A stretch of 63,431 nt of DNA, filler included, from Octopus bimaculoides (taxonomy: Eukaryota), in NCBI RefSeq assembly GCF_001194135.2. It is 6 parts of 6 records of this genome, joined end to end, with 100 filler letters (N's around TTAATTAATTAA, not from the genome) between each part and the next. Parts side by side here need not be neighbours in the genome. Positions count along the whole stretch, not along the records: positions 21,066 to 41,972 come from NC_069010.1; 5 more parts are not named here. One strand, given 5' to 3'. Below are positions 30,774 through 30,922 of this stretch, one piece after another (position 1 is the stretch's first letter; each line of letters starts with the position of its first letter). Under the pieces are notes generated by a model. That model was not told where the DNA came from. It did not search any database and saw nothing but the letters and a program-made list of their open reading frames with translations. The translations under genes and the position numbers were made by a program.

Positions 30774-30922
30774 ATCTTTCTGATGGTTCTGTCTTTGGAT
30801 TCCATTGAGAATGTAACCTGCCAGAATGAACTGGCCTTGGCCTACGTTACCAATTCTATAATCATTCCTGTGGCTCGTATCGACAATTTCAAAGAACTTG
30901 GTGACCACCTCAACTCAGGAAT
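30774..30922 (+). CDS. Coding exon 3, TIR core (IFLMVLS...TCQNELALA...IIIPV)
   Basis: Acceptor tttctcattctAG; donor AT|GTATGC. The FLMVLS strand, CxxEL helix and IIPV strand are typical of TIR domains. Confidence 0.93.

What the first reader, a model, noticed from the sequence alone, without database searches (positions are those of the whole stretch)
30774..30922. TIR domain keeps the putative NADase catalytic glutamate (E78)
Seen: PDIVISY, KVWYD, IFLMVLS, TCQNELALA and IIIPV line up by eye with SARM1 PDVFISY, SVFID, NFVLVLS, WVHKEIVTA and NIVPI. The Glu codon is at 30828-30830. Known: this Glu (SARM1 E642, plant WCLxEL) is required for NAD+ cleavage by SARM1, plant NLR and bacterial TIRs. 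The Trp four residues before the Glu is Thr here, which could weaken or alter activity. Inference: possibly an enzymatic TIR making ADPR/cADPR-type products.
Basis: partly seen in the sequence, partly recalled or inferred. Interest (0 to 1): 0.75.

Follow-up and report, generated by a model that had tools for sequence, protein, structure and literature searches.

The report
Octopus TIR-HEAT gene retaining catalytic glutamate
The flagged stretch is one exon of an ordinary, intact octopus gene for an uncharacterised TIR-plus-HEAT-repeat protein; it keeps the glutamate that NAD-cleaving TIR enzymes need, but it lacks other active-site hallmarks and close relatives have replaced that glutamate, so enzymatic activity is possible but not the most likely reading.

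Summary
Window 30774-30922 is exactly exon 3 of a GT-AG spliced + strand gene. It is identical to Octopus bimaculoides LOC106869059 (UniProt A0A0L8HSV3, 'TIR domain-containing protein').

The spliced product is an N-terminal TIR domain, an EF-hand-like middle region and C-terminal HEAT repeats. Pfam TIR_2 scores 49.8 bits and the AlphaFold model has pLDDT 90. E78 (GAA, 30828-30830) lies in helix alphaC and aligns with SARM1 E642. S8 aligns with SARM1 S567.

The enzymatic reading is only partly supported:
- The protein belongs to a conserved invertebrate family with two subfamilies.
- Type B keeps every catalytic hallmark.
- The octopus-type subfamily (type A) has no aromatic residue four positions before the Glu (T74 here) and no conserved BB-loop Gly motif.
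- In type A the Glu is present in only 21 of 29 members. It is Asp in the nearest non-Octopus relatives, Gln or Arg in several gastropods and His in a bryozoan.
- The gene is under strong purifying selection (dN/dS 0.04 against O. vulgaris).

The most likely reading is an assembly or scaffold TIR descended from an enzyme. A weak ADPR-forming NAD+ hydrolase is the main rival. Interest is modest: this is a new member of a known kind.

The parts
26390..26453 (+). Exon 1. It holds the start codon (an in-frame TGA lies 9 nt upstream), strand betaA (DIVISY) and the start of helix alphaA. It includes S8 (26411-26413), the equivalent of SARM1 S567.
27282..27394 (+). Exon 2. It holds the end of alphaA, strand betaB (KVWYD), a long divergent BB loop (aa 33-45, 27314-27352; pLDDT below 50 at residues 41-43) and helix alphaB.
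30774..30922 (+). Exon 3, which is the finding. It holds betaC (IFLMVLS), alphaC (VTCQNELALAYV), betaD (IIIPV) and the start of alphaD. It is the most conserved exon against O. vulgaris (99.3% nucleotide identity).
30828..30830 (+). GAA codon of E78, the positional equivalent of the catalytic Glu (SARM1 E642).
30816..30818 (+). ACC codon of T74. This is position -4, where NAD-cyclising TIRs carry Trp, Tyr or Phe (SARM1 W638, AbTir W204).
33362..33963 (+). Exon 4. It holds the end of the TIR domain (the KLMLSKLNW strand and helix alphaE, to about aa 134), a Ser/Asp-rich linker, the conserved middle region with the Cbl_N2-like motif FWDRHF..W..F (33642-33719), and the start of the HEAT region.
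35393..35494 (+). Exon 5: a HEAT repeat (DPNIRAVATIALAKAG).
37271..37409 (+). Exon 6: a HEAT repeat (DKDRIVRESAVLSLGKL). It ends in phase 2 at a GT donor. The last exon (46 aa in O. vulgaris) is not in the piece.

Best explanation
The finding is exon 3 of Octopus bimaculoides LOC106869059. This is an intact gene under strong purifying selection, with seven exons in the O. vulgaris orthologue, six of which lie in this piece. It encodes a cytosolic protein of about 436 aa: an N-terminal TIR domain, an acidic linker, an EF-hand-like helical region and C-terminal HEAT repeats.

The protein belongs to a conserved family seen so far only in invertebrates. Named members come from molluscs, annelids, a brachiopod, a nemertean, a bryozoan, a hemichordate and amphioxus. 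The family splits into two subfamilies. Type B keeps the full NADase signature: Ser in betaA, a BB-loop AGxDF motif and the [Y/F]CxDE motif in alphaC. The octopus protein is type A, in which that signature has eroded.

E78 and S8 are most likely residues inherited from an enzymatic ancestor. I think the octopus TIR most likely works mainly as a self-associating signalling or scaffold module. On this view the highly conserved EF-hand-like and HEAT part acts as the partner- or ligand-binding regulatory module, and NAD+ cleavage is absent or marginal.

Shown here: the gene structure, the domain architecture, the fold, the position of E78, and the conservation patterns.

Inferred: loss or weakness of catalysis, the scaffold role, and the regulatory role of the HEAT part.
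For: Gene and architecture:
- The exonic translation is identical to XP_052834120.1.
- All six exon borders are conserved in O. vulgaris.
- dN/dS is 0.044 overall, 0.051 for the TIR and 0.014 for the middle-plus-HEAT part.
- Pfam finds TIR_2 and HEAT_2.
- Cbl_N2 EF-hand-like hits occur in 3 members, and the family profile hits the Cbl EF-hand start at E of about 0.013.

Eroded active site in type A (table, tree). In one search Octopus is represented by the window sequence only.
- Glu at the E78 column: 21 of 29, conservation rank 42 of 140 TIR columns.
- Ser at the S8 column: 18 of 29.
- Phe, Tyr or Trp at position -4: 1 of 29.
- BB-loop motif: 0 of 29.

In type B the same counts are 26, 29, 25 and 26 of 29.

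Replacements of the Glu occur in proteins that otherwise stay well conserved: Asp in P0177 and P0179 (the sister group of Octopus), Gln in Elysia (two species) and Littorina, Arg in P0188 and His in Watersipora.

Literature:
- AbTir W204A has reduced activity, L6 W131A and ROQ1 W82A are inactive, SARM1 W638A is weaker, AbTir BB-loop G174A and S176A are inactive, and E208D has reduced activity (bioRxiv 10.1101/2022.05.07.491051).
- Only 12 of 61 Glu-bearing animal TIRs were active in E. coli.
Against: - E78 and S8 are both kept in Octopus, and the TIR is under strong purifying selection.
- Glu is still the majority residue across type A, from amphioxus to bivalves. That argues for some constraint on it.
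- Asn at position -1 is, to my own knowledge, common in active plant TIRs (WCLNEL).
- BB loops vary widely among active TIRs, and activity often appears only on forced oligomerisation.
- I could not measure the geometry of E78 in the model, because no coordinates are available.
- A hydrolase that releases only ADPR does not require the aromatic residue as strictly as a cyclase does.
Confidence: 0.55

Rival explanations
1. The octopus TIR is a working NAD+ glycohydrolase. On self-association E78, helped by S8, cleaves NAD+. Without the aromatic residue at position -4 the product would be mainly linear ADPR plus nicotinamide rather than a cyclic isomer. The HEAT and EF-hand-like part would hold the enzyme off until a signal arrives, as the ARM domain does in SARM1.
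For: - E78 aligns with SARM1 E642 and S8 with S567. The Ser sits 2.6 A from the Glu and is needed for activity in SARM1 and in plant TIRs (bioRxiv 10.1101/2025.04.09.647920).
- E78 lies in helix alphaC of a confident model.
- Glu is kept in 21 of 29 type A and 26 of 29 type B members.
- The type B paralogues carry the complete catalytic signature, so the family ancestor was probably an enzyme.
- Catalysis by non-TLR animal TIRs is now documented, including in a mollusc.
- The TIR is under strong purifying selection.
Against: - T74 replaces the aromatic residue, and there is no BB-loop Gly motif. Mutants of these elements are weak or dead in AbTir, SARM1, L6 and ROQ1.
- The Glu is replaced by Asp, Gln, Arg or His in several orthologous lineages whose proteins are otherwise conserved.
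- The base rate of detectable activity among Glu-bearing animal TIRs is about 20%.
Confidence: 0.3
2. The TIR uses E78 for a different chemistry reported for some TIRs. Candidates are base exchange, removal of the NAD cap from RNA, and nuclease or 2',3'-cNMP synthetase activity on nucleic acids. Bulk NAD+ hydrolysis would not be its role.
For: Such activities have been reported for TIR domains whose fold matches this one: NAD-RNA decapping (PMC10937652, listed), 2',3'-cNMP synthetase (bioRxiv 10.1101/2021.11.09.467869, listed), and the L7 TIR with bound ligand among the Foldseek hits. The active site is altered but the Glu is kept.
Against: Nothing in this sequence points specifically to these activities. 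The same missing aromatic residue contacts the product in the L7 complex.
Confidence: 0.07
3. The apparent gene is a pseudogene or an annotation artefact, and E78 has no meaning.
For: The O. bimaculoides protein model stops at 390 aa by reading through the exon 6 donor (TG|gtag gives TGG TAG). The last exon is not in the piece.
Against: - Six exons stay in frame with canonical splice sites, and the borders are conserved in O. vulgaris.
- dN/dS is 0.044, from 37 synonymous and 7 non-synonymous differences.
- Full-length relatives are present as RNA-seq contigs from many runs.
- Intron 6 of O. vulgaris is 4.66 kb, and only 4.56 kb follow exon 6 here. The last exon is therefore simply expected beyond the edge of the piece.
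Confidence: 0.03

Closest known systems
SARM1 / C. elegans TIR-1 (animal NAD+ hydrolase TIR)
   Same: - TIR fold: Foldseek E = 4.7e-6 to SARM1 and 6e-6 to TIR-1.
- The profile alignment (E = 2e-10) puts E78 on E642 and S8 on S567.
- An alpha-solenoid domain sits in the same polypeptide as the TIR (ARM in SARM1, HEAT here).
   Different: - The domain order is reversed (TIR at the N terminus), and there are no SAM oligomerisation domains.
- T74 stands in place of W638.
- There is no equivalent of the SARM1 BB loop with G601.
- It is not a SARM1 orthologue.
Type B paralogues of the same TIR / EF-hand-like / HEAT family (for example Capitella CAPTEDRAFT_228584, Saccostrea LOC134244307, Glandiceps 'tirA-like')
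   Same: Colinear full-length homology at 26-31% identity. The three-part architecture and the C-terminal WRNDxISxVR..A..AL..IGG motif are the same.
   Different: Type B keeps SYSHxD, the VWVDxxxLxAGxDFLxKIG BB loop and [Y/F]CxDE, and 18 of 29 members start with Met-Gly (myristoylation-like). Octopus type A lacks the BB motif, the aromatic residue and the Met-Gly start.
Bacterial and plant enzymatic TIRs (AbTir, SPARTA TIR-APAZ, RPS4, RUN1, L6/L7, ROQ1)
   Same: - Best PDB profile hit is AbTir at 9e-7.
- Best structural superpositions are SPARTA TIR-APAZ, with TM-score 0.75-0.76 and rmsd 2.7-2.9 A.
- The C-x-[DN]-E-L core of alphaC resembles the plant WCL[DN]EL motif (own knowledge).
   Different: The WxxxE tryptophan is lacking, and the partner domains are different.
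Adaptor or scaffold TIRs of animals (MyD88, MAL, TLRs)
   Same: TIR fold: MyD88 at E = 7.3e-6, and TLR15, TLR6 and MAL are also among the hits. The proposed mode of action is assembly.
   Different: Those TIRs mostly lack the Glu. No death domain or leucine-rich repeats are present here.
[quoted passage not shown] 2017, Dev Comp Immunol)
   Same: They are cytosolic TIR proteins that are widespread in invertebrates and absent from vertebrates, with a hypothesised adaptor or regulator role (described in PMC6321704).
   Different: I could not read the original paper. Whether this TIR-HEAT family is one of the numbered ecTIR-DC families is therefore unverified.

Membership tests
TIR domain (Pfam TIR_2; flavodoxin-like TIR fold) | Profile score above the curated cut-off | tested here: met
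   TIR_2 scores 49.8 bits against a cut-off of 28, over aa 5-134. 27 of 28 family members match.
TIR domain (Pfam TIR_2; flavodoxin-like TIR fold) | Alternating beta/alpha fold that superposes on solved TIR domains | tested here: met
   The AlphaFold2 model has pLDDT 89.9 and pTM 0.85, with the order betaA-alphaA-betaB-BB loop-alphaB-betaC-alphaC-betaD-alphaD-betaE-alphaE. All 50 Foldseek PDB hits listed are TIR domains, with probability 1.00 and TM-scores up to 0.76.
NAD+-cleaving (catalytic) TIR domains | Glutamate on helix alphaC at the catalytic position (SARM1 E642, AbTir E208) | tested here: met
   hmmsearch and hhalign pair E78 with the Glu of SARM1 KEIVTA. E78 lies in helix 73-84 of the model. 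The side-chain orientation could not be inspected.
NAD+-cleaving (catalytic) TIR domains | Conserved serine at the end of betaA, next to the Glu (SARM1 S567, SNC1 S26, AbTir S140) | tested here: met
   S8 in DIVISY aligns with S567 in DVFISY. The requirement is described in bioRxiv 10.1101/2025.04.09.647920.
NAD+-cleaving (catalytic) TIR domains | Aromatic residue four positions before the Glu (the WxxxE motif; SARM1 W638, AbTir W204) | tested here: not met
   The residue here is T74. Type A has Phe, Tyr or Trp in 1 of 29 members, and type B in 25 of 29. The functional importance is described.
NAD+-cleaving (catalytic) TIR domains | Conserved BB loop with Gly, which forms the composite active site between two TIRs (SARM1 G601, AbTir G174) | tested here: not met
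   The octopus loop YDKLPSSINSTVE has no Gly and has pLDDT below 50 at residues 41-43. The AGxDF-like motif occurs in 0 of 29 type A and 26 of 29 type B members. BB loops do vary among active TIRs, so this weakens the case but does not exclude activity.
NAD+-cleaving (catalytic) TIR domains | Catalytic Glu conserved among orthologues | tested here: inconclusive
   Type A has Glu in 21 of 29 members. Asp occurs in 2 (the sister group of Octopus), Gln in 3, Arg in 2 and His in 1.
NAD+-cleaving (catalytic) TIR domains | Measured NAD+ turnover that depends on the Glu and on self-association | not testable with these tools
   This needs protein expression and an etheno-NAD or LC-MS assay.
SARM1 orthologues | ARM - SAM - SAM - TIR architecture with the TIR at the C terminus | tested here: not met
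   The TIR is at aa 5-134 and HEAT_2 at aa 297-375. No SAM domain is found in any of 28 members.
Invertebrate TIR / EF-hand-like / HEAT family, type A | Colinear full-length similarity, and placement in a tree with the molluscan members | tested here: met
   phmmer hits cover aa 4-389. In the NJ tree the window sequence groups with Octopus vulgaris, then with P0177 and P0179, then with gastropods and bivalves. Exon borders are shared with O. vulgaris.

The most novel reading that the evidence does not exclude
The TIR / EF-hand-like / HEAT family is an unstudied metazoan signalling system with a SARM1-like logic, and it may be ancient. An alpha-solenoid (HEAT) plus EF-hand-like sensor would control an N-terminal NAD+-cleaving TIR, and in type B members the protein would be membrane-anchored by myristoylation. 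On this reading the octopus type A protein would be a working, Trp-less TIR that produces linear ADPR or an unusual product.
Probability: 0.15. Interest if true: 0.6.

Novelty: new member of a known kind. Interest (0 to 1): 0.3.

Why it matters
Catalytic TIR signalling in animals outside SARM1 has only recently been recognised. A conserved family seen so far only in invertebrates, which pairs a TIR with HEAT repeats, would be a natural candidate for a new NAD+-linked immune or stress pathway.

The most useful result here is the split into two subfamilies. Type B has a complete catalytic signature and the octopus-type subfamily has an eroded one. This gives a ready-made natural experiment on how TIR enzymes turn into scaffolds. 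It also shows which family members are worth testing first: type B, not the octopus protein.

For the octopus gene itself the result is ordinary. It is an annotated but uncharacterised TIR protein, and keeping the Glu is common among non-TLR animal TIRs.

Tried and rejected
Searches and predictions that gave nothing useful:
- The word-indexed homologue search with the 109-aa TIR piece found nothing. The exhaustive search was needed.
- phmmer of the single TIR sequence against the PDB gave only chance antibody light-chain matches.
- Single-sequence AlphaFold gave an unusable model with pLDDT 39.

Exon 7:
- A scan for phase-2 acceptors followed by open frames found no candidate.
- tblastn with the O. 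vulgaris protein at E <= 10 found no exon 7 in 37410-41972.
- blastn of the downstream region against the O. vulgaris locus is swamped by repeats after the first 211 nt.

Other genes and RNAs:
- The other long 'ORFs' in the piece span N gaps or microsatellites and are not genes.
- Rfam gave no hit at gathering threshold.

Literature:
- Searches for TIR plus HEAT architectures gave nothing relevant.
- Gerdol et al. 2017 is not held.
- The family's UniProt accessions and the word 'HEAT' do not occur in the held parts of the Hurieva et al. supplementary tables. Tables S1, S2 and S5 were cut when stored.
- The organism behind the run that yielded P0177 (SRR8281678) could not be identified. The runs that yielded P0179 were not looked up.

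Ideas rejected:
- SARM1 orthology, because the architecture is wrong.
- A prokaryotic origin for the window, because it has GT-AG introns and is identical to the octopus protein.

Full report
WHAT THE WINDOW IS

The piece 21066-41972 is animal genomic DNA, not a prokaryotic sequence. It is about 40% G+C and contains six runs of N. It is full of microsatellites, minisatellites and interspersed SINE-like repeats present in both orientations. It has no long bacterial-style ORFs. The few ORFs over 140 aa either span N runs or are microsatellite translations, except the one that covers exon 4.

GENE MODEL

Reading the flanks gives six exons with canonical AG...GT borders:

| Exon | Coordinates |
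|---|---|
| 1 | 26390-26453 |
| 2 | 27282-27394 |
| 3 | 30774-30922 |
| 4 | 33362-33963 |
| 5 | 35393-35494 |
| 6 | 37271-37409 |

They join into one frame of 389 codons that begins at an ATG preceded by an in-frame stop. The finding's coordinates are exactly exon 3. Codon 78 is GAA at 30828-30830 and codon 74 is ACC (Thr) at 30816-30818.

The exonic translation is 100% identical to Octopus bimaculoides XP_052834120.1 (LOC106869059; UniProt A0A0L8HSV3, 'TIR domain-containing protein'). It is 98% identical to the 436-aa O. vulgaris / O. sinensis protein LOC115226206.

In the O. vulgaris genome all six exon borders are conserved. A seventh exon encoding the last 46 residues follows a 4.66-kb intron. 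Only 4.56 kb follow exon 6 in this piece, and tblastn does not find exon 7 there. It most likely lies just beyond the edge. The 390-aa O. bimaculoides database model ends by reading through the exon 6 donor (TG|gtag gives Trp then stop).

IS THE GENE ALIVE?

Between the two Octopus species there are 37 synonymous and 7 non-synonymous differences. dN/dS is 0.044 overall, 0.051 for the TIR and 0.014 for the middle-plus-HEAT part. Exon 3 differs at one nucleotide in 149. Full-length relatives are assembled from RNA-seq in many runs. This is a functional gene.

WHAT THE PROTEIN IS

Pfam finds TIR_2 at aa 5-134 (49.8 bits, cut-off 28) and HEAT_2 at aa 297-375 (50.5 bits).

An AlphaFold2 model of aa 1-145, built with a 36-sequence family alignment, has pLDDT 89.9 and pTM 0.85. 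It shows the standard TIR order of strands and helices. E78 lies inside helix alphaC (residues 73-84). The only poorly predicted part is the BB loop, with pLDDT below 50 at residues 41-43.

All 50 Foldseek hits listed from the PDB are TIR domains: plant RPS4, RUN1 and L7, then SARM1, C. elegans TIR-1, SPARTA TIR-APAZ (TM-score 0.75-0.76, rmsd 2.7-2.9 A), MyD88 and AbTir.

The region between the TIR and the HEAT repeats is conserved in the family. It starts with a motif, FWDRHF...W..F, that resembles the start of the EF-hand-like domain of Cbl. Pfam Cbl_N2 hits 3 of 28 members (best E = 1.4e-4), and the family profile hits Cbl chains at E of about 0.013. This is weak evidence, and I record it only as a lead.

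DOES E78 SIT AT THE CATALYTIC POSITION?

Yes, as far as sequence and secondary structure can tell.
- A profile of the family's TIR segments hits AbTir (9e-7) and the SARM1 TIR (3e-6) in the PDB.
- hhalign against SARM1 560-657 gives probability 96.9% and E = 2e-10.
- Both the SARM1 match (the AbTir match ends before this position) and the hhalign alignment put E78 on the Glu of SARM1 ...HKEIVTA..., which is E642.
- hhalign also aligns S8 of DIVISY with S567 of DVFISY. That serine lies 2.6 A from the Glu and is needed for activity (bioRxiv 10.1101/2025.04.09.647920).

THE FAMILY AND THE ORTHOLOGUE TEST

The exhaustive search gave 29 hits below 1e-30 that share the architecture end to end.

Named members are all 'uncharacterized' or 'TIR domain-containing'. 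They come from:
- bivalves: Pecten, Mizuhopecten, Mytilus, Ostrea, Saccostrea, Pinctada, Solemya and Ylistrum;
- gastropods: Lottia, Haliotis, Elysia and Littorina;
- annelids: Capitella and Owenia;
- one species each of brachiopod (Lingula), nemertean (Tubulanus), bryozoan (Watersipora), hemichordate (Glandiceps) and amphioxus (Branchiostoma).

No vertebrate, arthropod or nematode member appeared among the hits I retrieved.

A motif table and an NJ tree separate two subfamilies. Some species have both, for example Pinctada and Saccostrea.

| Feature | Type B (n = 29) | Type A (n = 29; includes the window sequence, Octopus vulgaris not counted) |
|---|---|---|
| Ser at the S8 column | 29 | 18 |
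| Asp at position -1 | 29 | 22 |
| Glu at the E78 column | 26 | 21 (rank 42 of 140 TIR columns) |
| Tyr or Phe at position -4 | 25 (plus 3 His) | 1 |
| BB-loop AGxDF-like motif | 26 | 0 |

Within type A the Glu is kept in Octopus, bivalves, Haliotis, Lottia, Owenia, Lingula, Tubulanus and Branchiostoma. It is replaced as follows:
- Asp in P0177 and P0179. These are 65% identical to the octopus protein and are its sister group in the tree.
- Gln in two Elysia species and in Littorina.
- Arg in P0188.
- His in Watersipora.

In those lineages the rest of the protein remains well conserved.

HOW TO READ THIS

Published mutagenesis shows that the aromatic residue at position -4 and the BB loop matter (bioRxiv 10.1101/2022.05.07.491051):
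- AbTir W204A has reduced activity and largely loses cyclisation.
- L6 W131A and ROQ1 W82A are inactive.
- SARM1 W638A is weaker.
- AbTir G174A and S176A in the BB loop are inactive.
- AbTir E208D has reduced activity.

An aromatic residue at that position was found in all TIRs that make a cyclic product, and less consistently in those that do not.

A recent survey found that most non-TLR animal TIRs keep the Glu. Only 12 of 61 Glu-bearing animal TIRs gave a detectable product in E. coli (bioRxiv 10.64898/2026.04.20.719644). Retention of the Glu is therefore expected and is weakly predictive on its own.

Here it is combined with the loss of two other hallmarks, and the Glu is dispensable in sister lineages.

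My best reading (about 0.55) is that the family ancestor was an enzyme, that type B probably still is, and that the octopus-type TIR now acts mainly as an assembly or scaffold module. The very strongly conserved EF-hand-like and HEAT part would be the partner- or ligand-binding element.

The main rival (about 0.3) is a working but Trp-less NAD+ hydrolase that would make linear ADPR rather than a cyclic isomer. It would be regulated by the solenoid part in a SARM1-like way.

Minor rivals are another TIR chemistry (0.07) and a pseudogene or artefact (0.03). The latter is contradicted by the dN/dS value and the conserved splice sites.

COMPARISON WITH KNOWN SYSTEMS

It works like, and is, a TIR-domain protein.

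It is not a SARM1 orthologue. The TIR is N-terminal, there are no SAM domains, and it has HEAT rather than ARM repeats.

It meets two of the sequence features of catalytic TIRs (the Glu and the Ser) and fails two (the aromatic residue and the BB-loop motif). I therefore do not file it as a catalytic TIR.

It probably falls among the 'evolutionarily conserved TIR-DC' families catalogued for invertebrates (mentioned in PMC6321704). I could not read the original catalogue, and my full-text searches for a paper describing a TIR-HEAT architecture found nothing relevant.

VERDICT

- The object is an annotated but uncharacterised gene, so it is a new member of a known kind.
- Interest is modest (0.3).
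- The more interesting by-product is the contrast between type A and type B. It identifies the type B proteins as the better candidates for a new animal TIR enzyme.

Noticed in passing
window 37400-37415, and downstream to 41972: The public O. bimaculoides protein model (390 aa) ends because it reads through the exon 6 donor (CGC TG|gtag gives Trp then stop). O. vulgaris has a seventh exon encoding 46 more residues (RNDPVNGVRQ...ALKTKS) after a 4.66-kb intron. That exon is not in this piece, which has only 4.56 kb after exon 6 and two N gaps. The O. bimaculoides model is probably truncated.
   Followed up: partly
window 33642-33719 (aa 203-228); family alignment A3: The conserved middle region starts with FWDRHFxxxxxxxWxxF. 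This resembles the start of the EF-hand-like domain of the Cbl ubiquitin ligases (AEFWRKAFGEKTIVPWKSF). Pfam Cbl_N2 hits 3 of 28 members, and PDB Cbl chains match at E of about 0.013. The similarity is marginal and unexplained.
   Followed up: partly
family members P0008, P0165-P0168, P0010, P0013, P0014 and others (type B): A paralogous subfamily keeps a complete NADase-type signature (SYSHxD, the AGxDF BB loop and [Y/F]CxDE). 18 of 29 of its members begin with Met-Gly, which suggests N-myristoylation and membrane anchoring. Only 2 of 29 type A proteins do, and the octopus protein does not. Whether cephalopods have a type B gene was not determined.
   Followed up: partly
P0191 (EukProt record 'sb/3463521', 561 aa): One family member carries a protein kinase domain (PF07714 / PF00069) fused in front of the TIR-HEAT unit.
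   Followed up: no
window 23041-23260, 26820-27042, 31589-31810, 39429-39635, 41766-41972, and other sites: Introns and flanks hold several families of interspersed repeats of about 100-220 nt, in both orientations, at 75-98% identity. They look like SINEs. None matches an Rfam family at gathering threshold, and none overlaps an exon.
   Followed up: partly
window 35601-36440, 24814-25900 and 34962-35322: Intron 5 holds a 108-nt minisatellite of 6 or more copies that runs into an N gap. A 67-nt tandem array flanks another N gap upstream of the gene. Intron 4 holds an 8-nt-period microsatellite that translates as LSIYLSIY and produces spurious ORFs.
   Followed up: no
P0010 and P0019 (type B relatives): Their N-terminal extensions contain many copies of a QAVQNNENE(K/R) peptide repeat placed before the TIR.
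   Followed up: no
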